A stretch of 64,000 bases of DNA from Obrimoposthia wandeli (GCA_977020255.1 CDROCS010006241.1:248001-312000); one strand, 5' to 3'. Positions 38,270 through 53,051 are shown, counted from the stretch's first letter. Notes: generated by a model from the sequence alone, not told the origin. A program made the numbers and translations.

Positions 38270-40540
38270 ATGAGTGAGAGTAAAGATTTTTTACGTACTA
38301 TAGTTGAAGAAGATATAAAGTCAGGCAAAAATAAAGAGATTGTTACAAGATTTCCACCAGAGCCTAATGGCTTCCCACACATTGGACACGCTAAATCTAT
38401 CTGCATAAACTTTGGTATCGCACGTGATTTTAATGGTCATTGTAACCTTAGAATGGATGATACAAATCCAACTAAAGAAGATACAAAATATGTCGAGGCT
38501 CTTAAAGATGCTGTACAGTGGCTTGGCTTTGATTGGGGTGATAATGTACATTTTACTTCTGATTACTTCCCTAAGATATACGATTATGCTCTTACTCTTA
38601 TTAAAATGGGGAAAGCATATGTTGATAGTCTAAATGAAGAAGATATGCGTGAATATCGTGGAACTATTACAGAAGCTGGAAAACGTAGTAAATTCGCAGA
38701 ACGTAGTATTGAAGAAAATTTAGACCTTTTTGAAAGAATGAAAAAGGGTGAGTTTAAAGATGGAGAACATGTTCTAAGAGCTAAGATTGATATGTCTGCT
38801 GCTAATATGAAAATGAGAGATCCACTTTTATATCGTATCAGACATGCTCATCATTTTAGAACAGGAAATGAATGGTCTATTTATCCAATGTATGACTTTG
38901 CTCACTGCTTATCTGATTATATGGAAAGTGTTTCTCACTCTATTTGTACACTAGAGTTTGAAAACAACCGTGATATTTACAATTGGGTACTAGATGAACT
39001 TGGACTTGATTTACCGCGTCCGTACCAACATGAATTTGCACGACTTGGCATTAACTACACAGTTATGAGTAAAAGAAAGCTTTTAGAATTGGTTCAAGGT
39101 GGACAAGTTAGTGGCTGGGATGATCCTCGTATGCCTACAATTGCTGGGTATAAAAGAAAAGGATATACAAGAGAGTCTATTTTAAACTTCTGCGATCAAA
39201 TAGGTATTGCTAAAGCAAATTCAATGGTTGATGTTGCACAGCTTGAGTTTTGTATACGTGATGATTTAAATAAAAAAGTACCACGTGTCCTGTGTGTTCT
39301 TGATCCACTAAAAGTAACAATTGAGAATTATGAAGGTTGTGAAGATATTGATGCACCATACTATCCTCATGATGTGCCTAAAGAGGGATCAAGAAAGATA
39401 CCTTTTTCAAGTGAAATTTATATTGAACGTGATGACTTTTGTGAGAATCCTCCAAAAGGTTACTTCCGTCTTACTCCTGCACAACCTGTACGTCTTAGAC
39501 ATGGGTTTATTATCTCTTGTAAAGAAGTTATAAAAGATGCAAATGGCAATATCCTTGAGATAAAAGCAGAGTATCATGCTAACTCTAAAAGTGGTTCTGA
39601 TACTAGTGGTATCAAAGTAAAAAGTGCTATCCAATGGGTTAGTGCAAAAGAGGCAAAAACAGTTGAAGTAAGGTTATATGATAGATTATTCAAAGTTGAA
39701 GCTCCAGAAGGAGTAGAAGATATAAATCCAGATTCTTTACAAGTTATCAAAAATGCACTTGTTGAACCTGCGGTTATAAGTGAAAAACCTGATGAGAGAT
39801 TCCAGTTTGAAAGACAGGGATATTTTTATGCTGACCCAATTGATTACACAGATGAAAAACCTGTATTTAATAAGATTGTCGGGCTAAAGGACTCTTGGGG
39901 TAAAAAAGAAAAAATTACTCATAATGGTGATATTGTAACGCATAAAGGTAAACCTGTTATACATAAAAAAGAGCAAGTAGTAGGTACTGAAACAGCTATG
40001 AATGAAGAGCAGCAGACATTATTTGATAAATACACTGCTGAGCTTGGTCTAAACAGTGAAGTAGCAAATATACTAGCTCGTGATGAGAATCTTTCATCAT
40101 TCTATGAAGAGTCTTTATCTATGCTTAATAGCCCAATTGCACTAGCTAATATCGTGGTAACTGAGGTAGCTAGAGAGTTAAAAGAAAAGCCAGCAAATGA
40201 GCTAAAATTTAATGCAAAACAAATATCAGAACTTGTTAAAATGCTTGATGAAGAAACTATTTCAAGTAAAATTGCTAAACAAGTATTTGAAGCAATGGTT
40301 AAAACAGGTGAAAATCCAACACAAATAGTTGAAGACAAGGGTCTGGTTCAAATAAGTGACCCTTCTGTTATTTCACCTATTATTGATGAAATAATTGCAA
40401 AGAATCCAGACAACGTCGCTAAATTTAAAGCAGGTAACACTAAACTTTTAGGCTTTTTTGTAGGTCAAGTACTAAAAACTACTGGGGGCAAAGCAAACCC
40501 AAAAGTAGTGAATGAACTTGTAGCTCTTAAGTTAAAATAA
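38270..40540 (+). CDS. glnS: Glutamine--tRNA ligase with C-terminal YqeY/GatB-like domain
   Basis: RFPPEPNG, HIGHAKS, YPMYDFAH, VMSKR, FQFERQGYF; tail ISSKIAKQVF...GFFVGQV...GKANP. Confidence 0.93.
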   Translation: MSESKDFLRTIVEEDIKSGKNKEIVTRFPPEPNGFPHIGHAKSICINFGIARDFNGHCNLRMDDTNPTKEDTKYVEALKDAVQWLGFDWGDNVHFTSDYFPKIYDYALTLIKMGKAYVDSLNEEDMREYRGTITEAGKRSKFAERSIEENLDLFERMKKGEFKDGEHVLRAKIDMSAANMKMRDPLLYRIRHAHHFRTGNEWSIYPMYDFAHCLSDYMESVSHSICTLEFENNRDIYNWVLDELGLDLPRPYQHEFARLGINYTVMSKRKLLELVQGGQVSGWDDPRMPTIAGYKRKGYTRESILNFCDQIGIAKANSMVDVAQLEFCIRDDLNKKVPRVLCVLDPLKVTIENYEGCEDIDAPYYPHDVPKEGSRKIPFSSEIYIERDDFCENPPKGYFRLTPAQPVRLRHGFIISCKEVIKDANGNILEIKAEYHANSKSGSDTSGIKVKSAIQWVSAKEAKTVEVRLYDRLFKVEAPEGVEDINPDSLQVIKNALVEPAVISEKPDERFQFERQGYFYADPIDYTDEKPVFNKIVGLKDSWGKKEKITHNGDIVTHKGKPVIHKKEQVVGTETAMNEEQQTLFDKYTAELGLNSEVANILARDENLSSFYEESLSMLNSPIALANIVVTEVARELKEKPANELKFNAKQISELVKMLDEETISSKIAKQVFEAMVKTGENPTQIVEDKGLVQISDPSVISPIIDEIIAKNPDNVAKFKAGNTKLLGFFVGQVLKTTGGKANPKVVNELVALKLK

Positions 40541-40621: not shown

Positions 40622-41782
40622 TTATTCAAAAACTTTTTTCAATCTTTGTATCCCTTCTTTTATTTCTTTTTTACTTGAATTGGTAAAATTTAATCTCAGA
40701 TAACTTTTTTGTAATTTATCTTCAAAGAAGACACTTCCTGGAATATATAAGATTTTTGCTTTTTTTGCTTTTTCAAATAACAACTTCGTATCAGAATTAT
40801 TTTTTAATTTAGCCCATAAAAACATTCCTCCTTTTGGTTTTTCAACTTCTAGGACATCATTCAACTCATTTTTTAGGGTTTTATAAAAAAAGTCACATTT
40901 TTTCTTATATGACGTAGTTAATACTTCTATGTGTTTAAAAATATCAAAATTGATTAAATAGTTATATAAAATATATTGTGAAAATAGATTAGTATGCAAG
41001 TCTTTATACTGTTTTGCTACTGTTATCTTTCCCAATATCTCGGTTGTTGCTATAATATATCCCACTCTTAAAGAGGGAATGAGTATTTTTGAAAAAGAAC
41101 CAATATAAATTGTATTTTTAGGTGCTAAATCATATATGGTCGATTGTACTTTATTTTTAAAATTTAAAAATCGGTAAGGATCATCTTCTACAATGATCAG
41201 ATTGTATTTGATTGCCATTTTTGCCAGAGCTTTTCTTTTTTTAAGGCTATAGCTAATTGAACTTGGGTTTTGAAAAGTAGGAATAACATAAAAAAATTTA
41301 TATTTATTTTTTTGCAGTTTCGATTCCAGTTCTTCCAAGTTTAAACCATCATGTTCTAATTGTATCGTATGACATATTGCCCCATGGGATTTGAATAATC
41401 CAATGGCTCCAAGATAACTTGGCTCTTCAACTAAAATTTTTTCATCTTTATTTAAAAATATGGAAGAAATCAAATCCAATGCTTGTTGACTTCCATTTGT
41501 GATAAGTATCTCTTCTTTTAAATTGAACTGTGTTTTAATGGTATCAATAAGTTTTGGTAAACCGTTGGTTGCTGAGTATTGAAATAAATCATTCGGCAAT
41601 TGTAAAGAGTACTTTTCAAAAATAGCGTGTATCTCTTTTCTTGGGAATAACTTATTATTAGGTAAGCCTCCTGCAAATGAAATAACGTCTTTTTGATTGG
41701 CTATTTTTAAAACATCTCTTATAAATGAACTTTGTATATTTTCATACTCTTTCGAAAAAAAATATTTCATAGTAAACCTCAT
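40622..41782 (-). CDS. PLP-dependent aminotransferase (2-aminoadipate transaminase-like)
   Basis: ISFAGGLP, TNGSQQALD, IPTFQNP, EDDPY and GSFSKIL motifs. Confidence 0.88.
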   Translation of the reverse strand: MRFTMKYFFSKEYENIQSSFIRDVLKIANQKDVISFAGGLPNNKLFPRKEIHAIFEKYSLQLPNDLFQYSATNGLPKLIDTIKTQFNLKEEILITNGSQQALDLISSIFLNKDEKILVEEPSYLGAIGLFKSHGAICHTIQLEHDGLNLEELESKLQKNKYKFFYVIPTFQNPSSISYSLKKRKALAKMAIKYNLIIVEDDPYRFLNFKNKVQSTIYDLAPKNTIYIGSFSKILIPSLRVGYIIATTEILGKITVAKQYKDLHTNLFSQYILYNYLINFDIFKHIEVLTTSYKKKCDFFYKTLKNELNDVLEVEKPKGGMFLWAKLKNNSDTKLLFEKAKKAKILYIPGSVFFEDKLQKSYLRLNFTNSSKKEIKEGIQRLKKVFE

Positions 41783-41935
41783 TTTCTCTATCTTCAGTAT
41801 AACATTAGAAAAAAATAAATTTGTTTTGAAAATAAAACTAAAGAGATTTTTTTAGATATGATTTTTTTTACAATGATATAATATATTTAAGATATTAAAT
41901 TAAATGCAAATGTTACCTTAGAAAAAGGAGATATC

Positions 41936-42739
41936 ATGCATAATAATATTGACACCCTTTTTGAAAGTTTATGGCAGAATTATATTTCTGTGACACCTAC
42001 AGCTACTAAAATTCATAGCCTTTTTGCCCAAACTCAAAAAAATTATATCATCAATGATCATATTGCTTTGCGTACTTTTAATCTGGAAAAAGTTAATTTA
42101 GAAAAATTAGCTATGCATTTTAAAAAAGTAGGCTACAAAGAGTGTGGAGAATATGATTTTGAAGAGAAGAAACTATATGCCAAACATTTCGAACATCCAA
42201 ACTCTACTAAACCTAAAGTATTTATTTCTGAATTATTGGTTGAAAAATTTCCACAAAAAGTACAAAATATAATTGAAGAGTTGGTCAATAACATCGATGA
42301 ATCCTCTTTAGATGCTGATAATTTTTTATATTCTGGTACACATTGGAGTATTGATTTACAGACATATAAAATGTTACTTGAACAAAGTGAATATGCAGCG
42401 TGGATGGCAGCATGGGGATACAGAGCCAATCATTTCACTATCAGTATTAATCATTTAGAATACTTTAAAACAATTCAAGAGGTCAATCAAAAACTCAAAG
42501 ATTCTGGATTTATTTTAAACAGTAGTGGAGGAGAAATAAAAGGAACTCCTGAAGTTTTACTCGAGCAGTCTTCTACCCTTGCAGATAATTTCAGTGTAAA
42601 ATTTAGTGATGGTCAACTTTTGATACCTAGTTGTTTTTATGAGTTCGCGTTACGTTACAAAAAAGAAAATGGAGAATTCTATACTGGTTTTGTTGTGGCT
42701 TCCGCAAATAAAATTTTTGAAAGTACAAATAAAAGATAA
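41936..42739 (+). CDS. DUF1338 protein (2-oxoadipate dioxygenase/decarboxylase HglS-like)
   Basis: NDHIALRT, PKVFISEL, SEYAAW, NHFT, LEQSST and FYEF motifs. Confidence 0.8.
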   Translation: MHNNIDTLFESLWQNYISVTPTATKIHSLFAQTQKNYIINDHIALRTFNLEKVNLEKLAMHFKKVGYKECGEYDFEEKKLYAKHFEHPNSTKPKVFISELLVEKFPQKVQNIIEELVNNIDESSLDADNFLYSGTHWSIDLQTYKMLLEQSEYAAWMAAWGYRANHFTISINHLEYFKTIQEVNQKLKDSGFILNSSGGEIKGTPEVLLEQSSTLADNFSVKFSDGQLLIPSCFYEFALRYKKENGEFYTGFVVASANKIFESTNKR

Positions 42740-42894
42740 TAATAAACCCATAGGCTGAGAAATTAGAATATCAAATCAATTTTAATTTATCTATATGTCT
42801 GGACAACTTACAAGTTATTTTTGTTACAATTAATTTACAAAAAATAGAAATACATACATTGATTTTCTATTTTACTCAAATAAGAGGGAATAAA

Positions 42895-43587
42895 ATGTTA
42901 CTAAAAAAGTTAATTACAATGGGTTTTGTATTGCTATTAGGTGTGAGTGTATATGCACAAGATAAAAAATCAGCTTCAGGAATACCATTGGATACCCAAT
43001 GGAAAGTTAATATCTATGAGTATGCACAGAGAAACTTTATTCATACAGCATGGGGAGTTGGACATGCGGAGAGAGATTATAACTTGGCATTACAATTAGC
43101 AAAAAAAGACAATCTTCCTATTGATGAAGATGCCCTATTTGCAGCTGCATTTTTACATGATATTGGCTCTTTTAACAAAGTTAAAGGAGAAGAGCACTCT
43201 GTTACGTCTGCAAATATGATGGAAACTGTATTAAAAGATTTTGGTTTTCCAATGCAAAAAAAAGAACTCGTAAAAAATGCAATCTTAGGACACTATTATA
43301 AATCAAAGGTTCCAGATGAAGCAACAGCAAAAGTTCTACATGATGCAGATACACTGGACTTTATGGGAACAATAGGAATAGCAAGAATCATTTCTTTGAC
43401 AACTAGAATTGAAAGCTGGGTTCCTACACTAGATAAGTCATTTGCTACATTGGAGAGAATCAATGCAAAGTTTGGATCAGTGCTTGTAACATCTGCAGGA
43501 AAAAAAGTAGGGATAAAAAGAGCAAAAGAAGCTCAAACTTTTTTTAAATCTATCAAAGAAGAGACATATAATAAAACATCTATCTAA
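42895..43587 (+). CDS. HD-domain phosphohydrolase with predicted signal peptide
   Basis: GVGHAERDY, LHDIG, LHDADTLD; hydrophobic N-terminus ending VYA; start at ATG 42895 behind GAGGG. Confidence 0.8.
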   Translation: MLLKKLITMGFVLLLGVSVYAQDKKSASGIPLDTQWKVNIYEYAQRNFIHTAWGVGHAERDYNLALQLAKKDNLPIDEDALFAAAFLHDIGSFNKVKGEEHSVTSANMMETVLKDFGFPMQKKELVKNAILGHYYKSKVPDEATAKVLHDADTLDFMGTIGIARIISLTTRIESWVPTLDKSFATLERINAKFGSVLVTSAGKKVGIKRAKEAQTFFKSIKEETYNKTSI

Positions 43588-43696
43588 AAGTTAAGGAGAG
43601 ATTTTCTCTCTTTAATTGCTCTGTGCCATTCGTGAATATAAACCAGCTAAAGAAATGTTAATAAATATTTTCAAATAATCGTAATTTATTTTAGGT

Positions 43697-43763
43697 AAAA
43701 AAAAAGCTTCTAGATAAAAGAACCTAGGTTCATATATCTAAAAGCTTTGTATGGTTCCGGATG
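43697..43763 (-). repeat. att-like direct repeat (tRNA-Asn 3' end plus terminator), left copy
   Basis: 65/67 identical to 50731-50797. Confidence 0.9.
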
Positions 43764-43907
43764 AGGGAAACCCAATATTCGAACTTATTGAACATTCACA
43801 CATTAAAATCTCTACAAGTAAAAAACTGAAATCCACTTTTCAATCAGGGGTAGTAAGGGTTTAAATTTATGATTTAAAAGGCACACTTCTTATTAGTGGT
43901 CATAAAT

Positions 43908-44257
43908 TTATTTCTGAACCATTGAAAGGGTTAATTCTTCAAAATCTTCTTTAAAATCTTCTCCAGATTCCTGTGCAGATTCATTCTCTTCATCATATAT
44001 CCAATTTACTTCTATAGCTTTACCATTATTATGAGCTTCTTCTAACAAATCAAATAAGTCAAAAAAGAGTTTTGAACTACTTGAGTTAAAATATATTATT
44101 TCTAAGTTTATAATTGTTTTATCTTGTCCATTACTGGTTTATAAAATTCAAATGTATTTTCGGGGTATGATTTTCCTACTAATTCGAATACACCTTTTTG
44201 TGCATCTAGGTTTATTAGTGGTGTATATTTTGTTTCATCTATTGTTAAGTTATTCAT
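43908..44257 (-). pseudogene. siaC: SiaC family (DUF1987) phosphoprotein, frameshifted
   Basis: Frame 1 MNNLTIDETKYTP...GKSYPENTFEFYKPVMD stops at 44108-44110; another frame continues GQDKTIINLEIIYFNSSSSK...VNWIYDEENESAQESGEDFKEDF to TAA at 43908-43910; total 350 nt. Confidence 0.85.
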
Positions 44258-44259
44258 AT

Positions 44260-44808
44260 TTATTTAGCCTTACTTGTAAGTATTGTTGTTTTAATATGAA
44301 AATAGTATCTATCTTCTTGTATCTTATTAAATTCATATTTTATTGAATTGCATTTTTTTGCAATCTCATAAAAGCCAATTCCTCCACCTTTTCCATGAGT
44401 ATTTTGACCACTTCTTCTTAGTTCTCTATATCTCTTTTTTATTCCATCTCTATCTAAGGACTGTATCTCTAAAAGTTTTGGTTCAATTTTTTCTTTATCT
44501 TCAAGTGAAATGATATTTTGGCTATCAATATAGTAATTAAATTCTTTGTCTTTTGAAACAATAATAAGTCCTTCTGCCCTTTTGGTATTCTCGTTAATGG
44601 ATTTAGAATAATTCATTATATTTTGGGAAAGTTCAATAAATATAGTAAACATATTAGCAGATACACCCATTCCTGTACCGTTATCTTTAGCCTCTTGTTC
44701 AAAGGCTTCAATCATCTCAGAGATAAGAGCCTGAGAAAGATATCCACCATAGTTTAAGAAGACTATACCATCATCATCAACCATTTTCTGTATAGCTTTA
44801 ATATTCAT
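44260..44808 (-). CDS. siaB: SiaB family protein kinase (DUF6272-like)
   Basis: FLNYGGYLSQ, IFIELSQNIMNYS, IDSQN and GGGIGFYEIAK; sits between a PP2C gene and a DUF1987 gene. Confidence 0.85.
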   Translation of the reverse strand: MNIKAIQKMVDDDGIVFLNYGGYLSQALISEMIEAFEQEAKDNGTGMGVSANMFTIFIELSQNIMNYSKSINENTKRAEGLIIVSKDKEFNYYIDSQNIISLEDKEKIEPKLLEIQSLDRDGIKKRYRELRRSGQNTHGKGGGIGFYEIAKKCNSIKYEFNKIQEDRYYFHIKTTILTSKAK

Positions 44809-44855
44809 ATCCTACTATCCTTTTATATTTTTATACCATTACTCATGTAGTTTGA

Positions 44856-47800
44856 TTAGGTATTTTGGCGCCTATCTTGTTCATTAACTCTGTTATCCCT
44901 ACTAGAATTAGTATTTTTATCACTTTTTTGATTTAATGTATTTCCTATTTTTATACCAATCACTGTTACATCATCATTTCTCTCTTCATCATCTTGATAA
45001 TCTTGCAATTCATAAAGTAACATTTTTTGTTGGTCCGCAAAACTATCATCCTTATACGTTTCTATTATATTTGTGAATTTCTTTTTTCCAAATGGGAATC
45101 CTTTATCTCCACCATTTTGATCTAAATATCCATCAGTAGTTATATAAAACTGCATTCCTTCTTTTACTTTTATTTCATGATCTTTAAATTTGTAATTCAT
45201 ATCACTTTTTTTGTATCCAATAGAGTGACGATTCCCTTTTATAGTTTTCAACTCTCCATTTTCAATGTAAAATAGAGGTGTTTCCGCCCCTGCAAATCTA
45301 ATTATAGATTCTTTTTTATTGTAATATAAAATTCCACCATCAAATCCTGCATTTGATATTGATGTTTCATCTTCTTGTTTTAATAGTTTTTTCATAGTTT
45401 GATTAAAATAACTCAAAATCCAAGCAGGGCTTACTTCCATGCTCTCATCATTTGCAATGATTGCAGATACTTGTCTCTCAATTGCTTTTACAAGCATAGT
45501 TACAAAAGCACCTGGAACACCATGTCCTGTACAGTCAATTGCCATTATTAAACACTCATCACCATTTCTTAGTTCTTCCAATAAATATATATCTCCACCT
45601 ACAATATCTTTAGGATGCCATATTACTAGGTAGTCATTAAAATATTTTCTAAATAATTCAGCTTCTGGAACAAGTGCTCCTTGAATAAGAGAGGCATATT
45701 CAATACTATCTCTTGTATGCTTATGAATCTCTCGTATTTCTTCTTCAATCACTTTTTGTTTCGTTATATCTGTTATCATTCCTATATACGATGCTTCATT
45801 TTTATAGGTAATAGGGGTAACAGATAAAAGTGCGGTGAACTCTTTATCATGTGCTGTTTTAAAAACTTCCTCTGAGTTTTCAACAAATCCATCTCTTTTA
45901 ATAGCCTCTATTATGTGTGCTTGTTGCCCTTGGATTGTATATACATCATCAATATCACTACCAATTATTACATCAAGTGGCATATCATATTGTTTTTGAG
46001 CATATTTATTAGCATATAGGATCTTTCTGTCTTTTTTAGATGTTATAAGAACAGGTAGTAAAATGTTCGACAATATTAATTCAACTTCTTTTTTTGCTTT
46101 TTCCGCTTCTGTTTGTGCTTTTTCCATCTGAGTTATATTAGTAAAAACTGCTGACATTGGACTCTCTTTATTTGGTAAAAGACTCGCGTTTACACTAAAT
46201 ATAAATAAGTTATTATTTAAAACTATTTGTGCTTTATGTGTATTTTCTGAATATTTCAGAATATACTCTATCCACGATAAGTCACCCATATACTTTTGTA
46301 AATATCCCTCAGGTGAACTTTTATCAAATGTATCACAAATACAATCCCCAAATTTATCCATAAAAAGTTCAACTGTTTTTAAATCATAAAAATTAAAAAA
46401 TGTTTTATTAGCACTAATAAGTCGTTTTCCATTAGTGGTAATAATAATCTGTTCTTGAGAATCTAATAACGTTTGTACAAACTCTTTTTGTAGATTTATT
46501 TTTCTGTTGTAGTAAAGACCTATAAGAATAAAAAGTAAAATTCCGCCACCGATCTTCCAAAAAATAGTGTAATCAGTACTTTGTTTAACCTCTGTATGTA
46601 CCCAATCAGAATAAATTTTGTCTCTCTCTTGTTGTGTTAAAGTATCAAAAATTTTATTAACAATTGACAAAAATTCAGGATATTTTTCAGAAATTAAAAA
46701 TTGGTGTTTAAAATCAAATTTAGCTTTTCCAGAAATTTTTAGATTATCACGACCCAATTTATCTATATAATATAAAGAGGGAGCTAAATGACCTAAAAAT
46801 ACATCTGCTTTTTGATTAGATACGTTAAGTAATGCCTCTTCTATTGTATTAGTCTCAATAATCTTAGCTTCTGGATACAAAGTTTTAAGAAAGTTATAAC
46901 TTGTATAATATTTTGGAATAGAAAACACTCTATCTTTTATCTCACTCAAAGAGTTTACATAATTTATATTTTCATTAGTTATAATTGATAAGGGATACTT
47001 TGCATACATATTGGACATAGGACCTAAAGCTTTCTCTCCTTCACTATCTCCAGCTCCTGGGACAAAATCAATTTCACCATTTTTAAACTTTTCTAATACA
47101 TCTGGCCATGATTTTGATTTTATAAATTTAAGTTCCATTCCCGTATATTTTTCAATTATATTAAGATAGTCTCTCATTATTCCAGTCATATTATTGTTTT
47201 CAATAATTGATAAAGGCTTCCAATTTATGTCACTATATGTTAGAGTTTTATTTTTTTGTAGCCACTCTAATTCTTTTTGTGAAAAATCAATATTTATTTT
47301 ATTTTCATCTTTTTCAAACCAATTATTTAATATTTTATTTATTTCTGATTGAGATATATTATCCATTGCTTTATTAACAATTTGAGATAACATTGTTTTT
47401 TCTTTATTCACTGCAATATGTAAAGAATTTTGGTTTTGAGTTATAGGTAAAACAGCTTTTAATCCTGTTTGCATATTTGAAGCTAAATGAAATTTTACAA
47501 CAGCATAATTATCAATATAAACATCGGCTTTCTTTAATATTACAGCATTAACACCGTCTGTCATTGATTTTACTTTATAAAATTCTATTTTTGGATATCT
47601 TTTAGCCAAATAATCTAATGTTGCATAGCCATCAATGAGTGCGATTTTTTTAGATTGTAATTCATCTAAAGATTCAACTGCTTTATCATCTGTTCTCATA
47701 AAAACATAATCTTTTACTTTAAAGTATGGTTTTGTAAATGATGAAAATTCTTTTCTCTCTTCATTTTTATACATAGCAGGAAGAATATCGATTTTCCCTA

Positions 47801-50435
47801 TTTTAAAATCAGCCAATAAATCTTTCCATGTTTGACCTGTCTTATATTCAAGTTGCAAGCCAGTTTTTTGAGCAACCAATGCAATAATATCTTTTGAGAT
47901 ACCTTGGTATTGACCATTTTCACCTACAAAGTCAAATGGAGCCCAATCTAACTCTCCTCCCACAACAACTTTATTACTTGTAATCCATTTTTTTTCTTTT
48001 TTAGTTAACTCAATCAGAGAGCTTTTATTTACTGAGTTATTATTTGATATCCATTTTTTTTCTATTTTTTCTATTTCATCTTCACTAAGAGTTGCAAATG
48101 CTTTATTTAGTATGGTTATAAGTTCTGGCCAATCTTTTCGCACACCAATTCTAATTGGAAGTGCTTCACCTTCCCAGCCTAATGTTCCACCTAAAACAAC
48201 ATTATCAAGAGAGTGTTTATTTTTATAGTAATTTACAACTGAAGTCAAGTCAATCATAGCATCTGCTTTTCCAAAGGATACAGCTTGGATACATTCTAAT
48301 GTGTTTTTCATAGGAAGTATTTTTATTTGCGGATATTCTTTTAATTTATCTTCATAATAAAAACCTTTAGGTACAGCAAATGTTTTTCCAAATAATTCTT
48401 TAACTGTAGTTATTGGTTTTTCACCTTCTAGCATGTATAATGATTGTGAAAGCTCAGCATATGGTTTGGTAAAATTCAGAAATTTATCTCGCTCTTTTGA
48501 TTGAACAATATTAAGCATTACATCAATTTCTTTTGTTTTTACTTTTTTTACAAATTCATTCCAACTAGGTCCAGTTTCAAATTCAATTTGAAAGCCTGCT
48601 TTTTTAGCTAAGATATTTATATAATCAATTGACAAACCTCTTCCTCGCCCATTTTCATAAAAATTAAATGGTGCCCATGATTTTTCATTATTTACTTTTA
48701 TTATTGGATGTTTTGCTATCCAAGTTTTTTCTTCTTTTGTAAGATTCAGTTTAACTCTATTTTTATGATTTGTTATCGTCCATTTATTTTCAAGTGCACT
48801 CATTTCATCATGAGTAATACTGTTTACGGCTTTTTGTAATGCAGAATGTAAAAGTACTTTTTCTTTTGTAATACCCATATGTAAAGAAGTCTCTTCTTGC
48901 TGTTTTTTATCAACCTCTAGGTAATCAACTAACTCAATATTCGTAATTTGATTCTCTTTTGCATAATGTAAAAAAAGTAAAGGATTACCTACAATTGCAT
49001 CTATTTTTTTTGTTGCTAAATCTCTGACTAATTGAGCATTACTCTTTAGTTCAATTAATTTTACTTTTGGAAGTTGTTTTTTTATAATAGGAATACTGCC
49101 ATCTGATTCTTGCACACCTACTTTTAAATTAGATAAATCTGTATATGAATTAATTCGATTATCTGTAACTCTAGAAAAAATTCCTAATTTCCCTTTATAA
49201 TATGGAGTAGTAAATTTTGTAAATTCTTTTCGTTCCTTATTTTTATAAAATGCAGGTAGTACATCGATACTTTTTTCTTTAAACATTGTTAAAAGTTCTG
49301 ACCATGCATAACCATGAACAAACTCTATGTCTAAATTAAGTTTATTGGCAATAAGTTTTATATAATCAATACTCAAACCTCTTGGTTGCCCAAACTCATT
49401 GTAATCAAAAGGTGGCCAGTCCATTTCGTTACCAACTATGATTTTTGGATTCTGCTTAAGCCATTTTTTTTCTTCAAAATTAAGATTAATTTTGCCTTGT
49501 GATTTTTTATAAATAAAATTATCAAAATCATTTGTATTTGTACTAAATCCTAACAGTCGATATATTTGTGCTGTTTGGCGAATTCTTTCAATATCTATAT
49601 TTCCAAGAGTTATTTGCTTAATATATGCCAGTTTTTTTAGTTCTTTAGCTTCATACAATAAAGCCTCTTTTGTTTTATTTTGAGTATTATATTTTTTGAA
49701 TATAAGGTCAACACTCTCTTCAATATTAGTAAAAGCATATTCCCATCCTTTTAAACTTGCCTCATGGAAATTTTCAATAAGTTTTGGATTTTGTTTATAT
49801 AATTTTGATGATGTGTATAAAATATCACTGTAAAAATTAAAATCAAAATCTGATGGAGAAAAAACATTACTATCAACATTTTTAGAATCTAATAGATAAG
49901 GTTCATTAGATATATACGAGACAATAGCGTCTGTTTTATTTTCAATCAAATCGTCTATATTGAAACTATGCTTTTGCTTGATATAATTATTTTGATTAAT
50001 ACCTACAGACAAAAGCATTGCATTAATTGATGCCATATCAATATCATTAAGAGACATGATTCTTTTATTTTTCAGCTGTGATAATTTATTTATTTTAGTT
50101 TTAGTTGTTAAAACTAATGGACTTTTTTGAAAAGTAGCACTTAATAAAAGAATCTCTTTGCCATTTAGTTTTTCTAAAATCAAGGATGAACGCCCGACTG
50201 CAAAATCACTTTTTTGTTTTAATATATCAGCCATTGTATCAATACTAAAATCAAATTCTTTTATATTGACATCTATATCTAGGTCTTTGTAAAACCCTTT
50301 CTCTTTTGCCATATAATACCCTGCAAATTGAAACTGATGTTTCCAAGAAAGTTGTAAATCTACTTTGTTATTTGCGTATACAAATGAGGTAAAACAAAGT
50401 ATTAAAAATACAGATAGTAGATTTAGTTTTTTCAT
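44856..50435 (-). CDS. Giant SiaA-like PP2C/SpoIIE phosphatase with five periplasmic binding domains and PAS
   Basis: Signal peptide, NMT1/THI5-like domain (LSWKHQFQFAGYY), four family 3 SBP repeats, TM, PAS, SIEYASLIQ, VGGD, DCTGHGVPG, TDG, DDVT. Confidence 0.88.
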   Translation of the reverse strand: MKKLNLLSVFLILCFTSFVYANNKVDLQLSWKHQFQFAGYYMAKEKGFYKDLDIDVNIKEFDFSIDTMADILKQKSDFAVGRSSLILEKLNGKEILLLSATFQKSPLVLTTKTKINKLSQLKNKRIMSLNDIDMASINAMLLSVGINQNNYIKQKHSFNIDDLIENKTDAIVSYISNEPYLLDSKNVDSNVFSPSDFDFNFYSDILYTSSKLYKQNPKLIENFHEASLKGWEYAFTNIEESVDLIFKKYNTQNKTKEALLYEAKELKKLAYIKQITLGNIDIERIRQTAQIYRLLGFSTNTNDFDNFIYKKSQGKINLNFEEKKWLKQNPKIIVGNEMDWPPFDYNEFGQPRGLSIDYIKLIANKLNLDIEFVHGYAWSELLTMFKEKSIDVLPAFYKNKERKEFTKFTTPYYKGKLGIFSRVTDNRINSYTDLSNLKVGVQESDGSIPIIKKQLPKVKLIELKSNAQLVRDLATKKIDAIVGNPLLFLHYAKENQITNIELVDYLEVDKKQQEETSLHMGITKEKVLLHSALQKAVNSITHDEMSALENKWTITNHKNRVKLNLTKEEKTWIAKHPIIKVNNEKSWAPFNFYENGRGRGLSIDYINILAKKAGFQIEFETGPSWNEFVKKVKTKEIDVMLNIVQSKERDKFLNFTKPYAELSQSLYMLEGEKPITTVKELFGKTFAVPKGFYYEDKLKEYPQIKILPMKNTLECIQAVSFGKADAMIDLTSVVNYYKNKHSLDNVVLGGTLGWEGEALPIRIGVRKDWPELITILNKAFATLSEDEIEKIEKKWISNNNSVNKSSLIELTKKEKKWITSNKVVVGGELDWAPFDFVGENGQYQGISKDIIALVAQKTGLQLEYKTGQTWKDLLADFKIGKIDILPAMYKNEERKEFSSFTKPYFKVKDYVFMRTDDKAVESLDELQSKKIALIDGYATLDYLAKRYPKIEFYKVKSMTDGVNAVILKKADVYIDNYAVVKFHLASNMQTGLKAVLPITQNQNSLHIAVNKEKTMLSQIVNKAMDNISQSEINKILNNWFEKDENKINIDFSQKELEWLQKNKTLTYSDINWKPLSIIENNNMTGIMRDYLNIIEKYTGMELKFIKSKSWPDVLEKFKNGEIDFVPGAGDSEGEKALGPMSNMYAKYPLSIITNENINYVNSLSEIKDRVFSIPKYYTSYNFLKTLYPEAKIIETNTIEEALLNVSNQKADVFLGHLAPSLYYIDKLGRDNLKISGKAKFDFKHQFLISEKYPEFLSIVNKIFDTLTQQERDKIYSDWVHTEVKQSTDYTIFWKIGGGILLFILIGLYYNRKINLQKEFVQTLLDSQEQIIITTNGKRLISANKTFFNFYDLKTVELFMDKFGDCICDTFDKSSPEGYLQKYMGDLSWIEYILKYSENTHKAQIVLNNNLFIFSVNASLLPNKESPMSAVFTNITQMEKAQTEAEKAKKEVELILSNILLPVLITSKKDRKILYANKYAQKQYDMPLDVIIGSDIDDVYTIQGQQAHIIEAIKRDGFVENSEEVFKTAHDKEFTALLSVTPITYKNEASYIGMITDITKQKVIEEEIREIHKHTRDSIEYASLIQGALVPEAELFRKYFNDYLVIWHPKDIVGGDIYLLEELRNGDECLIMAIDCTGHGVPGAFVTMLVKAIERQVSAIIANDESMEVSPAWILSYFNQTMKKLLKQEDETSISNAGFDGGILYYNKKESIIRFAGAETPLFYIENGELKTIKGNRHSIGYKKSDMNYKFKDHEIKVKEGMQFYITTDGYLDQNGGDKGFPFGKKKFTNIIETYKDDSFADQQKMLLYELQDYQDDEERNDDVTVIGIKIGNTLNQKSDKNTNSSRDNRVNEQDRRQNT

Positions 50436-50730
50436 TTGATGATATCCTTAATATCTTAACCATAAAAATTATTATACTTAACATATGATTACAGTATCTT
50501 ATCTTTATTTTCTAGTTACTATCGAAAACTTGTATTCTCAAACTAATTTTGCAGATGTAGTTTATTTATTTTTCACAGATTTGGTAGAAAATGAATATGA
50601 CATATTAAATGAGATTGAAAAATTTCCAAAGTCATGTTAGGAGGGGTTTTAATAAAAAGGCACACGCTCGACATTCTAATAATATAAAAAACTTTATCTA
50701 TGAGGTAATCATCTATATGGATTTTTTGGC

Positions 50731-50785
50731 AAAAAAAAAGCTTCTAGATAAAAGAACCAAGGTTCATATATCTAAAAGCTTTGTA
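50731..50785 (-). terminator. Terminator of the tRNA-Asn pair (part of the right att repeat)
   Basis: Long imperfect hairpin AAAGCTT..TAGATA..GAACC/GGTTC..TATCTA..AAGCTTT with a 9-T run on the minus strand. Confidence 0.8.
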
Positions 50786-50803
50786 TGGCTCCGGATGCTG
50801 GAT

Positions 50804-50836
<33 letters not shown>

Positions 50837-50860
50837 ACTCTACCACTGAGCTAATCCGGA
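50786..50860 (-). tRNA. tRNA-Asn (GTT)
   Basis: 75-nt cloverleaf TCCGGATTAGCTCAGTGG...GTGACTGTTAATCAC...GGTTCGAATCC...CCA. Confidence 0.97.
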
Positions 50861-50892
50861 ACATGTAAAAAAACATTTAAAAAAGAAGTGTA

Positions 50893-50910
50893 TGGCTCCG
50901 GATGCTGGAT

Positions 50911-50943
<33 letters not shown>

Positions 50944-50967
50944 ACTCTACCACTGAGCTAATCCGGA
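50893..50967 (-). tRNA. tRNA-Asn (GTT), identical second copy
   Basis: Identical 75-nt sequence with encoded CCA. Confidence 0.97.
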
Positions 50968-50995: not shown

Positions 50996-51024
50996 ATTAT
51001 ATTTAAAAATACATTTTTTGTCAA
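50996..51024 (-). promoter_or_regulatory. Consensus sigma70 promoter for the tRNA pair
   Basis: TTGACA (51019-51024), 17-nt spacer, TATAAT (50996-51001) on the minus strand. Confidence 0.85.
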
Positions 51025-51040
51025 GATATTTTGGGCTTTT

Positions 51041-51958
51041 TTACAGAAATTTATAAAATTTGATACCACTGCTATCAATAAGAGAAATTTGTTCATCTTT
51101 AAGTAAATTTTGTAAGCTGTTTTTACTATTTTCATCAAATAAATTGTCTATATCTTCATTAGTTAAAGGTCGTCGTCTTAACATTGCGATTATTTCTTCT
51201 TCTGAAAAGCTATTTCTCTGCTTTGGACGATTTTTATATGCAATATTTACATTTATTCCCTCAAACATCTTTGCAACACTTTCTAAAGTCTCAAATGTCA
51301 CTGGTTTTACATCATATGCAGGAGGTCTATCTATTGTTCCTATATCTACCCTACTTGGATTTATATTTTTTACTGCTTCATATAAAAGATTTATCTCTTC
51401 TTCTTTATCATTTAAATCTTTTACAAAAAGAATTTCTAACACAAATTGATTCTTGGTAGTTTTAGAGAACGCTATCATACTCTCTACTATCTTTTCAACA
51501 TCAATGCCACTGTGAATCCTATCAAGCTTTTTAAAGCACCTTTCACTTACACAATCAAGTGATAGTTTCACTGTATCAAAATTTAATAAAGTATTGAAAA
51601 TTTCATTATCATATATTGTACTTCCATTTGAAAGTATAAGTGTTTTTGCCTCACCTTTGATTTTATCTATTTCGATGATTAATTCATCTAACTTAGGATA
51701 CAAAGTTGGTTCACCATTTGCAGTTACTGTAATAACATCAATTTTTGGATGTTTATCAAATGATTCTTTAATAGCCGATATTATTTCTAGAACAGTAGGA
51801 TATGTTGTCATACTATCTACAGTTTTTGCTTTTTCTAGCTCACAATAAAGACAATCAAAATTACACTGCTTAGAAGATGGAGATAGGTCAACACCTAATG
51901 ATATACCAAACCTTCAAGAAGGAATTGGACCAAAAATAATAGAATTTGAATATGACAT
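51041..51958 (-). pseudogene. Radical SAM protein interrupted by an in-frame TGA at codon 15
   Basis: MSYSNSIIFGPIPS*RFGISLGVDLSPSSKQCNFDCLYCEL...; TGA at 51914-51916; the track ORF from 51811 lacks the CxxxCxxC motif. Confidence 0.8.
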
Positions 51959-51973
51959 GATTTTCTTTTTAGA

Positions 51974-51999
51974 AATAAGTAGGTAAAAACCTACTTATT
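51974..51999 (-). terminator. Terminator hairpin after hemE
   Basis: AATAAGTAGGT-AAAA-ACCTACTTATT. Confidence 0.65.
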
Positions 52000-52013
52000 A
52001 TAATATTTGAGAT

Positions 52014-53051
52014 TTATTTTTTTGAAACTCTTTGACATTCAGATACAAAGTGTATTGCATTTTCAACTGGAACATCTGGTAAAATTCCATGACCAAGATT
52101 AAAGATATGACCTTCACCTTGCATTGTCTCATGAATTTTTTCTACACATTTAGTAGTTTCTTCTTTTGAGTATAATCTACAAGGTTCCATATTACCTTGA
52201 AGAACATATTTATCACCTAGTTTAGCTTTTGCCATAGACATAGGAGTTCCCCAATCTACACCAAATACATCAAAGTTTCCATATACTCCACCCATGTTAA
52301 TAAATGCAGACACACCTTTAGGGAACATGATTACTGGAATATCAGGATATCTTTCTTTAATATATTCAGCAATTTCGACCATGTATTTCCAAGAAAATTC
52401 ATCATAACGTCCTGGCTCAATAGCAGAAGCCCAAGAATCAAAGATTTGCACAACATCAGCACCAGCTTCAATTTGTTTAATCATATAGAATTTAACTACT
52501 TCAGTTACTTTTCTAAGAATTTTATGAAGTAATTCGGGATTTGAATACATCATTTTTTTACAAATGTTATATGTTTTAGTCCCTTGTCCTTCAATCATGT
52601 ATGTAGCAAGTGTCCAAGGAGCACCTGTGAATCCAATAAGTGCCTTATCTTCAGGTAACTTTTGTTTTAAAAGTTTTATTGTTTCATATACATAAGTTAA
52701 CTTATCAGCCGCGGCTTCTCCACCAAGTAAAGCATCTACTTCTTCTTCATTTTTAATTGGGTCTCTAAATAAAGGACCCTCTCCTGTAACAAACTCTAAA
52801 TGCATTCCCATTTCATGTGGAATAACAAGAATATCAGAGAATAAAATCGCTGCATCAACACCAACAATGTCAAGTGGTTGAATAGTAACTTCACAAGCTT
52901 TTTCTGGGTTGTGACAAAGATTTAAAAAGTTTCCAGCTTCCGCTCTTACTTTCATATATTCAGGCAAGTATCTTCCTGCTTGTCTCATCATCCACACAGG
53001 AGTGTAAGGAGTCTCTTTTCTTAAACACGCATCTACAAATATTTTTGACAT
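52014..53051 (-). CDS. hemE: Uroporphyrinogen decarboxylase
   Basis: [25 protein letters not shown] and HIFNLGHGI motifs. Confidence 0.97.

What the first reader, a model, noticed from the sequence alone, without database searches (positions are those of the whole stretch)
43697..50797. Integrase-less island at tRNA-Asn delivering a SiaABC-like partner-switching system
Seen: two 67-bp direct repeats (65/67 identical) made of the tRNA-Asn 3' end plus its terminator bracket about 7 kb. The cargo is only a PP2C phosphatase, a SiaB kinase and siaC; there is no integrase and no siaD cyclase. Just inside the left copy, GTTCGAAT mimics the tRNA T-loop. Known: tRNA 3' ends are classic attB sites, and Pseudomonas SiaA/B/C control the cyclase SiaD via SiaC phosphorylation. 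Inference: a mobile or once-mobile Ser/Thr signalling cassette in Campylobacterota that plugs into a host output (one of several DGCs, or another partner), either mobilised in trans or now immobilised.
Basis: partly seen in the sequence, partly recalled or inferred. Interest (0 to 1): 0.72.

Follow-up and report, generated by a model that had tools for sequence, protein, structure and literature searches.

The report
Decayed integrase-less islet at tRNA-Asn
A 7-kb gene cassette sits between two copies of the tRNA-Asn tail and its terminator at a known insertion hotspot of an Arcobacter-like bacterium, but it has no integrase, its key switch gene siaC is broken and its usual output gene is missing, so it is a decaying island remnant, not a working delivered signalling system.

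Summary
Each copy holds the last 17 nt of tRNA-Asn plus the whole tRNA-operon terminator. Between the copies lie only siaA (1,859 aa), siaB and siaC, with no integrase and no GGDEF gene.

Three corrections:
1. siaC is a pseudogene. A 31-nt deletion shifts its frame, and independent contigs of two public runs show the same deletion.
2. In Arcobacteraceae the gene after siaC is an HD-GYP phosphodiesterase (27 of 30 public loci), not a SiaD cyclase. That gene is missing here.
3. The site is a general hotspot. hemE, a radical-SAM gene, tRNA-Asn and glnS are conserved across Campylobacterota, and the gap between tRNA-Asn and glnS holds different genes in every genome examined.

Integrase-bearing islands sit at this same tRNA in related genomes. 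Their repeats start at exactly the same tRNA position, 17 nt from the 3' end.

My best reading (about 0.5) is a CIME-like island remnant made by site-specific integration, now immobile on its own and decaying. A RecA-type duplication is the main rival. No near-identical copy of the cassette, empty site or cognate integrase was found. Interest is moderate to low.

The parts
38270..40540 (+). glnS (glutaminyl-tRNA synthetase with a GatB/YqeY domain). It is the core gene that bounds the variable zone on the far side.
   Evidence: Pfam tRNA-synt_1c and GatB_Yqey. Homologues (77-82%) lie 0.2-8.4 kb beyond tRNA-Asn in 11 public loci.
40622..43587 (.). An older accessory block between glnS and the left repeat: aminotransferase (40622-41782, minus), HGLS-family protein (41936-42739, plus) and a secreted HD-domain phosphohydrolase (42859-43587, plus).
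   Evidence: Pfam. The HD protein has no homologue at E<=1e-20 in 184 Arcobacteraceae genomes. It is unrelated to the HD-GYP partners of sia loci. None of the three genes lies at the tRNA-Asn locus of relatives.
43689..43768 (-). Left (orphan) repeat copy. 43752-43768 is the 17-nt tRNA-Asn 3'-end fragment (14/17 identical). 43689-43751 is the spacer, terminator hairpin, T-run and about 8 nt.
   Evidence: It shares the lineage-specific TAC spacer with the right copy, and ATATATG with the right copy and one metagenome relative.
43769..43907 (-). 139-nt non-coding stretch between the siaC stop and the orphan repeat. It holds the T-loop-like GTTCGAAT (43777-43784). The run's contigs have an extra 11 nt after 43875.
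   Evidence: No remnant of an HD-GYP gene or of the ~300-aa gene was found. The tRNA similarity is at chance level.
43908..44257 (-). siaC pseudogene. The N-terminal part (44108-44257) and the C-terminal part (43908 to about 44132) are in different frames. A 31-nt deletion lies at the 44132|44133 junction.
   Evidence: PF09345 matches profile positions 1-43 and 75-119 in two frames. The alignment to six intact homologues shows the gap. It is confirmed in Logan contigs of runs X1 and X2.
44260..44808 (-). siaB, a SiaB-family protein kinase with an intact ORF of 182 aa.
   Evidence: PF19788 1.4e-30. NF038262 124.6 bits, cut-off 85. PDB 6KKO chain A 9e-13.
44856..50435 (-). siaA-like sensor phosphatase, 1,859 aa and intact: signal peptide, NMT1, 4 x SBP_bac_3 periplasmic domains, a transmembrane segment, PAS and PP2C.
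   Evidence: Pfam. The PP2C domain matches P. aeruginosa SiaA (PDB 6K4E) at 3.5e-41, and the motifs GGD.Y, DC.GHGVPGA, TDG.LDQ and DD.T are kept.
50436..50722 (-). siaA upstream region, 287 nt, between the right terminator and the siaA start codon.
   Evidence: No homology to regions downstream of the terminator in relatives.
50723..50802 (-). Right repeat copy: the functional tRNA-Asn 3' end (50786-50802) and the tRNA-operon terminator (50723-50785).
   Evidence: The same terminator follows tRNA-Asn in 8 public or metagenome relatives and 3 co-assembled contigs at 89-96% identity, and marks the far end of the C5857 island.
50786..50967 (-). Two tandem tRNA-Asn(GTT) genes (50786-50860 and 50893-50967).
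   Evidence: ARAGORN. Rfam RF00005, 70.8 bits each.
50996..51024 (-). Consensus sigma-70 promoter (TTGACA, 17 nt, TATAAT; 12/12) upstream of the tRNA-Asn array.
   Evidence: This is a pattern match only.
51041..53051 (-). Core flank: a radical-SAM protein (51041-51811) and hemE (52014-53051).
   Evidence: Pfam. The order hemE, radical-SAM gene, tRNA-Asn is conserved in most of 80 Campylobacterota loci.

Best explanation
The stretch is the remnant of an integrative element, comparable to a cis-mobilizable element (CIME), at the tRNA-Asn hotspot of an Arcobacteraceae bacterium. A tyrosine integrase that crosses over at the edge of the tRNA-Asn T-loop once inserted a circular element. The attachment site of that element copied the last 17 nt of the tRNA and, unusually, the whole downstream terminator. 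The insertion rebuilt the tRNA and its terminator next to the tRNA (right copy). It pushed the original tRNA tail and terminator 7 kb away (left, orphan copy). The element has since lost its integrase. It has also lost the HD-GYP phosphodiesterase gene that follows siaC in relatives, possibly in one deletion beyond siaC. A 31-nt deletion then broke siaC.

Shown: the repeat, its boundary, the hotspot, the absent integrase, the broken siaC and the missing HD-GYP gene. Inferred: the integrase step, the order of the losses and present immobility.

As it stands the cassette cannot run a SiaC partner switch. SiaA and SiaB are intact ORFs, so either the decay is recent or they act on another substrate.
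For: 1. The repeat is exact in structure and far above background.
2. Its inner boundary is the last T-loop nucleotide, 17 nt from the tRNA 3' end. The repeats of integrase-bearing islands at the same tRNA in contig C5857 and locus L110 have the same boundary. So does the integrase-less scar in L078.
3. In L110 and L078 the identity also runs 16-20 nt past the tRNA end, so spill-over beyond the tRNA occurs at this site.
4. The gap between tRNA-Asn and glnS ranges from 0.2 to more than 8 kb and its content differs in every genome. Integrases sit there in C5857, L052 and L110, and an integrase fragment in L047.
5. No sia operon follows tRNA-Asn in any relative (one distant hit, 29-32%, to the solute-binding repeats of SiaA in L055). 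The sia loci examined with 6-10 kb flanks lie elsewhere, with no tRNA gene and no copy of the repeat.
6. The orphan tRNA fragment has 3 changes in 17 nt, as expected once it is released from selection. The hairpin, which still sits between convergent genes, has none relative to the closest outgroup.
7. The cassette is truncated compared with the family norm, and siaC carries a true 31-nt deletion.
Against: No integrase, excisionase or integrase fragment lies in the 7 kb. None was found on the contig (not exhaustive). The island-side arm next to the orphan copy (ATTGGGTT) differs from the TTTTTAGGTA arm of the C5857 and L110 islands, so these are not shown to be its helpers. The C5857 island does not carry the terminator in its tRNA-proximal end. 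None of 80 public loci shows a second terminator copy within 10 kb. The two window copies share a spacer (TAC) seen in no other genome, so the element's site would have to come from the same lineage. G+C content is no different from the flanks. No empty site and no second copy of this cassette was found. The best SiaB match anywhere is 79%.
Confidence: 0.5

Rival explanations
1. The duplication arose by homologous recombination, with no integrase acting on this cassette. A circular DNA carrying the tRNA tail, the terminator and siaABC, from the same species, recombined through RecA with the resident tRNA-Asn terminator by a single (Campbell-type) crossover. That duplicated the 80-nt homology. 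The circle may have reused the distal scar of an older island. The 17-nt boundary would then be inherited from that older integrase event.
For: The two copies share lineage-specific bases: the TAC spacer, the ATATATG motif (also in one metagenome relative, L157) and the ATCCGGA acceptor stem, which co-assembled contig C5067 also has. This is what duplication within one lineage predicts. No integrase is present. The repeat covers a complete functional unit rather than a short core. The inner arm differs from that of known islands at this site.
Against: Eighty bases is short for efficient RecA recombination. The model needs a circular intermediate whose source is unexplained unless an island excised. 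It still needs an earlier integrase event to explain the exact T-loop boundary.
Confidence: 0.27
2. The sia operon is an old resident. The left copy is only a member of a dispersed terminator family, or the product of gene conversion, so the repeat says nothing about mobility.
For: Copies of the hairpin alone, without the tRNA part, occur at other places in several Arcobacteraceae genomes at 79-89% identity. The G+C content of the cassette equals that of the flanks. SiaB homologues are common in the family, in 47 of 184 genomes.
Against: The left copy also carries the 17-nt tRNA tail (14/17) and the unique TAC spacer. It is 96-98% identical to the tRNA-linked copy over the hairpin, against 79-89% for the dispersed copies. 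No relative has sia genes at this site.
Confidence: 0.12
3. The repeat or the siaC frameshift is an assembly artefact.
For: The assembly is a very large mixture (1.35 Gb, 6,912 contigs) with at least five related Arcobacteraceae that share the terminator. Contig depth triples over the repeat.
Against: Logan contigs tile 42800-43725, 43725-43803 and 43774-45124 with no differences at the junction or at the siaC deletion. Two variant contigs both join the repeat to the cassette. The longest exact stretch shared by the two copies is 29 nt. The contig exceeds 312 kb. The runs come from one sample, possibly the source of the assembly, so this is not fully independent.
Confidence: 0.03

Closest known systems
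Cis-mobilizable elements (CIMEs) and integrase-less island remnants at tRNA genes
   Same: It is flanked by attL- and attR-like direct repeats at a tRNA 3' end and lacks integration and transfer genes. [quoted passage not shown] Related integrase-bearing islands use the same tRNA in neighbouring genomes.
   Different: No helper element with the same site arms was identified. Whether the repeats still work is untested, and the orphan copy has 3 mismatches in 17 nt. The repeat includes the whole tRNA terminator (63 nt beyond the tRNA), which I did not see in any other island at this site. The described CIMEs are mostly from Firmicutes (my own knowledge).
tRNA-Asn-specific tyrosine-integrase islands of Campylobacterota (contig C5857 of this assembly, and public loci L052 and L110)
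   Same: They use the same target tRNA. In C5857 and L110 the repeat has the same inner boundary, 17 nt from the 3' end. In L110 the repeat also runs past the tRNA end.
   Different: Those islands have a 396-aa integrase abutting the tRNA. C5857 also carries a GPA-type replication protein and defence-like cargo (HD-CE/HATPase, Fic). Their island arm is TTTTTAGGTA, and C5857 has no terminator after the tRNA. The window element has none of these.
Pseudomonas aeruginosa SiaABCD partner-switching system
   Same: The SiaA PP2C domain matches 6K4E at 3.5e-41, SiaB matches 6KKO chain A at 9e-13, and intact siaC homologues from sister contigs match SiaC (6KKO chain C) at 8e-24. The gene order siaA-siaB-siaC is the same.
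   Different: There is no SiaD cyclase. siaC is a pseudogene here. The sensor part of SiaA is five tandem periplasmic solute-binding domains plus PAS. The phospho-acceptor Thr68 aligns with Ser in the Arcobacteraceae SiaC. In this family the linked output gene is an HD-GYP phosphodiesterase.

Membership tests
tRNA-linked genomic island (integrase-mediated) | Lies directly at the 3' end of a tRNA gene | tested here: met
   The cassette starts 63 nt after tRNA-Asn 50786-50860.
tRNA-linked genomic island (integrase-mediated) | Flanking direct repeats that contain the tRNA 3' part | tested here: met
   80-nt repeat, 74/80 identical, with 17 nt of the tRNA. The boundary is the same as in bona fide islands at this tRNA.
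tRNA-linked genomic island (integrase-mediated) | An integrase gene within the element | tested here: not met
   No Phage_integrase ORF in 43769-50722. No match on contig C6241.
tRNA-linked genomic island (integrase-mediated) | Absent from the same site in related genomes | tested here: met
   No sia operon after tRNA-Asn in about 45 public loci, 4 metagenome loci or 4 sister contigs, and the content differs each time. One locus, L055, has a distant 29-32% hit to the solute-binding repeats of SiaA. No relative closer than about 89% DNA identity was available.
tRNA-linked genomic island (integrase-mediated) | Base composition differs from the host genome | tested here: not met
   G+C is 0.25-0.31 inside and 0.25-0.35 outside.
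Cis-mobilizable element (CIME) | Keeps attL and attR but lacks integration and transfer genes | tested here: inconclusive
   The repeats are present and no such genes are found. Whether the sites still recombine is unknown, and the orphan tRNA part has 3 mismatches in 17 nt.
Cis-mobilizable element (CIME) | A helper element with a matching att site and integrase | tested here: inconclusive
   Integrase islands use the same tRNA position in co-assembled and public relatives, but their inner arm is different. None was found on this contig.
SiaABC(D) partner-switching system | SiaA: a PP2C phosphatase with a sensor domain | tested here: met
   PF07228 1.1e-15, and 6K4E at 3.5e-41 with catalytic motifs kept.
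SiaABC(D) partner-switching system | A SiaB-family kinase | tested here: met
   NF038262 scores 124.6 bits against a cut-off of 85. The equivalog model NF038264 scores only 78 bits against a cut-off of 225, so this is a family member and not the Pseudomonas orthologue.
SiaABC(D) partner-switching system | An intact SiaC (DUF1987) phosphoprotein | tested here: not met
   A 31-nt deletion and frameshift at 44132|44133. Six homologues are intact.
SiaABC(D) partner-switching system | A linked output enzyme (the SiaD GGDEF cyclase) | tested here: not met
   There is no GGDEF gene in the cassette. Relatives carry an HD-GYP gene instead, and that is also absent here.

The most novel reading that the evidence does not exclude
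The cassette is a still-mobilisable, integrase-less element. Its attachment site carries a spare tRNA-Asn tail plus the tRNA operon's own terminator, so each insertion re-insulates the tRNA. It would be moved in trans by the tRNA-Asn integrases of islands in co-resident Arcobacteraceae. The Sia module it carries belongs to an undescribed variant in which SiaC controls an HD-GYP phosphodiesterase through that enzyme's N-terminal helical stalk, rather than a cyclase.
Probability: 0.12. Interest if true: 0.6.

Novelty: new member of a known kind. Interest (0 to 1): 0.33.

Why it matters
For the window itself, it documents an ordinary process: accessory genes accrete and decay at a tRNA hotspot. 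One detail is less usual, a repeat that includes the complete tRNA terminator.

The by-product is more useful. Across Arcobacteraceae the SiaA-SiaB-SiaC module is almost always followed by a small HD-GYP phosphodiesterase with an 80-residue N-terminal helical region. The only characterised system (Pseudomonas) uses SiaC to activate a cyclase by binding its helical stalk. If SiaC here regulates c-di-GMP breakdown instead, it would extend the idea that DUF1987 proteins modulate the activity of adjacent proteins (PMC8457831). It would also give a simple pair to test.

Tried and rejected
1. The left copy as a decayed whole tRNA-Asn. Local alignment of the 90 nt inside it to the tRNA 5' 58 nt is at chance level (p 0.19-0.34). 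The T-loop mimic is a 7-8-mer only.
2. The flanking HD-domain gene (42859-43587) as the missing HD-GYP partner. It is unrelated (BLASTP E 0.25). It resembles a generic phosphohydrolase and has no homologue in 184 family genomes.
3. A remnant of the HD-GYP gene, or of the ~300-aa gene, in the 139 nt after siaC. None was found.
4. A second terminator copy in 80 public hemE-tRNA-Asn loci. None within 10 kb.
5. Homology beyond the repeat to regions downstream of the terminator in relatives. Only 16 nt, in L045.
6. Compositional anomaly. None.
7. Rfam. Only the tRNAs pass the gathering score. A sub-threshold YrlA hit lies over the tRNA pair.
8. A close copy of the cassette elsewhere. The best SiaB match is 72% in 184 family genomes and 79% in the 5.8-billion-protein set.
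The contexts of P0001-P0019 and of genomes with several terminator copies (G170, G178, G173) were therefore not read.
10. The genome search 'relatives' is not available for this assembly.
11. Earlier notes of this scan held nothing on Sia genes.


Full report
**Observation**

ARAGORN and Rfam find two tandem tRNA-Asn(GTT) genes on the minus strand, at 50786-50860 and 50893-50967. The repeat finder reports an 80-nt direct repeat, 43689-43768 and 50723-50802, with 74 of 80 positions identical and a spacing of 7,034 nt. The next families in the 12-kb region are at most 35 nt long at 70-80% identity.

In tRNA orientation each copy has five parts:
- the last 17 nt of the tRNA, from the last T-loop base through CCA;
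- a 3-nt spacer;
- a hairpin with a 14-bp outer and a 4-bp inner stem (-19.9 and -20.8 kcal/mol, z -5.4 and -6.0);
- a run of nine T;
- about 8 further nt.

A perfect -35/-10 promoter lies upstream of the tRNA pair. The right copy is therefore the working end and terminator of the tRNA operon. The left copy is an orphan.

**Cargo**

Only three genes lie between the copies, all on the minus strand.
- siaA (44856-50435, 1,859 aa) has a signal peptide, an NMT1 domain, four SBP_bac_3 periplasmic domains, a membrane segment, PAS and a PP2C domain. The PP2C domain matches P. aeruginosa SiaA (PDB 6K4E) at 3.5e-41, with the metal-binding motifs kept.
- siaB (44260-44808) passes the NCBIfam SiaB-family model (124.6 bits, cut-off 85) and matches 6KKO chain A.
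- siaC is split. Pfam SiaC positions 1-43 lie in one frame (44108-44257) and 75-119 in another.

Alignment with six intact homologues shows a clean 31-nt deletion at 44132|44133, flanked by a short AAT(A/G)GA microhomology. It is not a homopolymer slip. Logan contigs of two public runs cover the site with no difference.

There is no integrase, no GGDEF gene and no further ORF of note.

**What the assembly is**

The window belongs to a 1.35-Gb, 6,912-contig assembly that holds many bacteria. At least four other contigs (C5857, C861, C121, C5067) carry the same tRNA-Asn terminator. C5857 and C861 share the hemE and radical-SAM flank with the window at 54-81% protein identity, and C5067 shares genes on the other side at 80%. 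They are different species, not copies. hemE places the window's organism in Arcobacteraceae, near Halarcobacter and Poseidonibacter: 93-94% to public MAGs and 97% to one metagenome contig.

**The site is a hotspot**

In 80 public loci recovered with hemE, the order hemE, radical-SAM gene, tRNA-Asn (one to three copies) is conserved from Arcobacteraceae to Sulfurimonas and Sulfurovum. In 11 of them glnS, the homologue of window 38270-40540, converges on the tRNA from 0.2 to more than 8 kb away. In the window the gap is 10.2 kb.

Its content is different in every genome examined. Examples are a methyltransferase with DUF2721 and PsiE, a GTP cyclohydrolase II, an SBP with an HrpB helicase and a BCCT transporter, a Cache-MCP with a PAS kinase, and a HAD hydrolase. 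None holds a sia operon; one locus (L055) gives a distant 29-32% hit to the solute-binding repeats of SiaA only.

The window's own left flank is also accessory. It holds an aminotransferase, an HGLS protein and a secreted HD phosphohydrolase. The HD protein has no homologue in 184 family genomes.

**Bona fide islands at the same tRNA**

In contig C5857 the tRNA-Asn is followed after 31 nt by a 396-aa tyrosine integrase, a GPA-type replication protein, an HD-CE/HATPase protein and a Fic protein. After 8.5 kb comes an orphan tRNA tail plus the native terminator. Homologous integrases sit at the tRNA in public loci L052 and L110, and an integrase fragment in L047.

In C5857 and L110 the distal repeat starts exactly 17 nt from the tRNA 3' end, preceded by a shared island arm TTTTTAGGTA. 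In L110, and in the integrase-less scar of L078, the identity also runs 16-20 nt past the tRNA.

The window's orphan copy starts at the same nucleotide. Its inner arm is different (ATTGGGTT), and its identity runs 63 nt past the tRNA. None of the 80 public loci has a second terminator copy within 10 kb.

**Origin of the two copies**

An alignment of 14 terminators shows that the window's two copies share a TAC spacer found nowhere else. They also share ATATATG, seen otherwise only in one metagenome relative, and the lineage's ATCCGGA acceptor stem, which co-assembled contig C5067 also has. They are each other's closest relatives.

The orphan has three changes in the 17-nt tRNA part and none in the hairpin relative to the nearest outgroup. 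The tRNA-linked copy has one change in the hairpin loop. This fits a displaced tRNA tail that is no longer selected, and a hairpin that still terminates the convergent siaC and HD genes. It also means that the duplicated unit came from the same lineage.

Hairpin-only copies (79-89% identical) occur elsewhere in several family genomes. They lack the tRNA tail and the spacer.

**The Sia module in this family**

Four other contigs of the assembly carry siaA, siaB and an intact siaC, with no tRNA or repeat nearby. In three of them a 263-282-aa HD-GYP protein follows, with the HHExxDGxGYP motif and about 80 N-terminal helical residues.

SiaB homologues occur in 47 of 184 Arcobacteraceae species genomes. 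Of the 33 best-scoring siaB loci that were cut out and read, 30 have siaC next to siaB. In 27 of those an HD-GYP gene follows, either directly or after a ~300-aa gene. Many also have a receiver-domain gene between siaA and siaB. The six public loci and four co-assembled contigs read with 6-10 kb flanks hold no tRNA gene, and the four contigs hold no copy of the repeat.

In P. aeruginosa, unphosphorylated SiaC binds conserved motifs on the helical stalk of the cyclase SiaD, and phosphorylation of Thr68 prevents that binding (PMC8457831). Thr68 aligns with Ser in the Arcobacteraceae SiaC.

I infer, but have not shown, that here SiaC acts on the stalk of the HD-GYP enzyme.

The window's cassette ends 139 nt after siaC with no trace of that gene. 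No such HD-GYP gene was found on its contig.

**Interpretation**

The best fit (0.5) is an island remnant of the CIME type. CIMEs have lost the genes for integration and transfer but keep attL and attR (PMC6323972).
- A T-loop-specific integrase inserted an element whose site copied the tRNA tail and terminator.
- The integrase and the HD-GYP gene were later lost, conceivably in one deletion distal to siaC.
- siaC then suffered a 31-nt deletion.

The main rival (0.27) is a RecA-type single crossover of a circle from the same lineage. It explains the shared lineage-specific bases and the missing integrase, but still borrows the boundary from an older integrase event.

A resident operon with an unrelated terminator copy (0.12) is hard to square with the tRNA tail and the unique spacer.

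An artefact (0.03) is unlikely, given the tiling contigs and the fact that the two copies share at most 29 identical bases in a row.

**Limits**

- No genome closer than about 89% DNA identity was available, so there is neither an empty site nor a second instance of this cassette.
- The best SiaB match anywhere is 79%.
- The two sequencing runs come from one sample, possibly the source of the assembly.

**Verdict**

The claim that a partner-switching system is being delivered is not supported. This is a truncated, partly dead cassette, a new example of a known kind.

The family-wide link between Sia modules and HD-GYP genes, and the terminator-inclusive repeat, are the points worth keeping.

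Noticed in passing
L036:3069-3860, L037:2996-3787, L033:4630-5478; public loci L118-L150: In Arcobacteraceae the siaA-siaB-siaC operon is followed by an HD-GYP phosphodiesterase gene in 27 of 30 public loci, and in 3 of 4 co-assembled contigs. The protein is 263-282 aa or about 410-450 aa and has an N-terminal helical region of about 80 residues. No GGDEF gene was seen at that position. I found no paper describing a SiaC/HD-GYP pairing.
   Followed up: partly
L009:1391-10000 and L013:1-60 (contig C5857): An 8.5-kb island at the same tRNA-Asn carries a tyrosine integrase, a GPA-like replication protein, a 953-aa HD-CE/HATPase_c_3 protein and a SoFic-like Fic protein. It ends in an orphan 17-nt tRNA tail plus the native terminator. 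The cargo looks defence-like.
   Followed up: partly
window 50723-50785 and 43689-43751; L038, L044, L045, L049, L050, L066, L098, L157: The tRNA-Asn terminator hairpin is 89-96% conserved between species whose radical-SAM gene beside the tRNA is only 54-82% identical at protein level. Hairpin-only copies occur at other places in several family genomes (G173 has four matches, three of them hairpin-only; G004 has three, two of them without the tRNA tail). It may be a dispersed terminator or REP-like family.
   Followed up: partly
window 43875 and 43773: The run's contigs carry an 11-nt insertion (AAAAGGCACAA, a tandem duplication) after 43875 at full depth. About half the depth has an extra T after 43773. 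There is thus strain-level variation, or an assembly difference, in the spacer between siaC and the orphan repeat.
   Followed up: no
window 42859-43587: A secreted HD-domain phosphohydrolase (weakly similar to PRK10119) has no homologue at E<=1e-20 in 184 Arcobacteraceae genomes, and only 29-34% matches elsewhere in the assembly. It is an orphan accessory gene next to the hotspot.
   Followed up: partly
L151 (G133:C1:31000-50999): The public genome with the closest SiaB (72%) has its siaA-siaB-siaC-HD-GYP operon only 2.6 kb from the conserved gene block that leads to hemE. That is on the opposite side of the block from tRNA-Asn.
   Followed up: no
table (for example G142:C1:36484-36972, G082:C6:22059-22529): Some Arcobacteraceae carry SiaB-like domains inside very long open frames (about 750-1,770 aa), apparently fused to the C-terminus of SiaA-like sensors. 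G082 has such a fusion followed by a separate siaB.
   Followed up: no
window 43645 (loose ends in runs X1 and X2): Contigs of both runs match from 43646 rightwards but continue leftwards into different sequence. A co-occurring strain or relative may have another left neighbour of the orphan terminator.
   Followed up: no
L031:7464-7826, L033:7333-7698 and many public loci: A stand-alone receiver-domain gene (about 120 aa) sits between siaA and siaB in many Arcobacteraceae sia loci. It is absent from the window's cassette.
   Followed up: no
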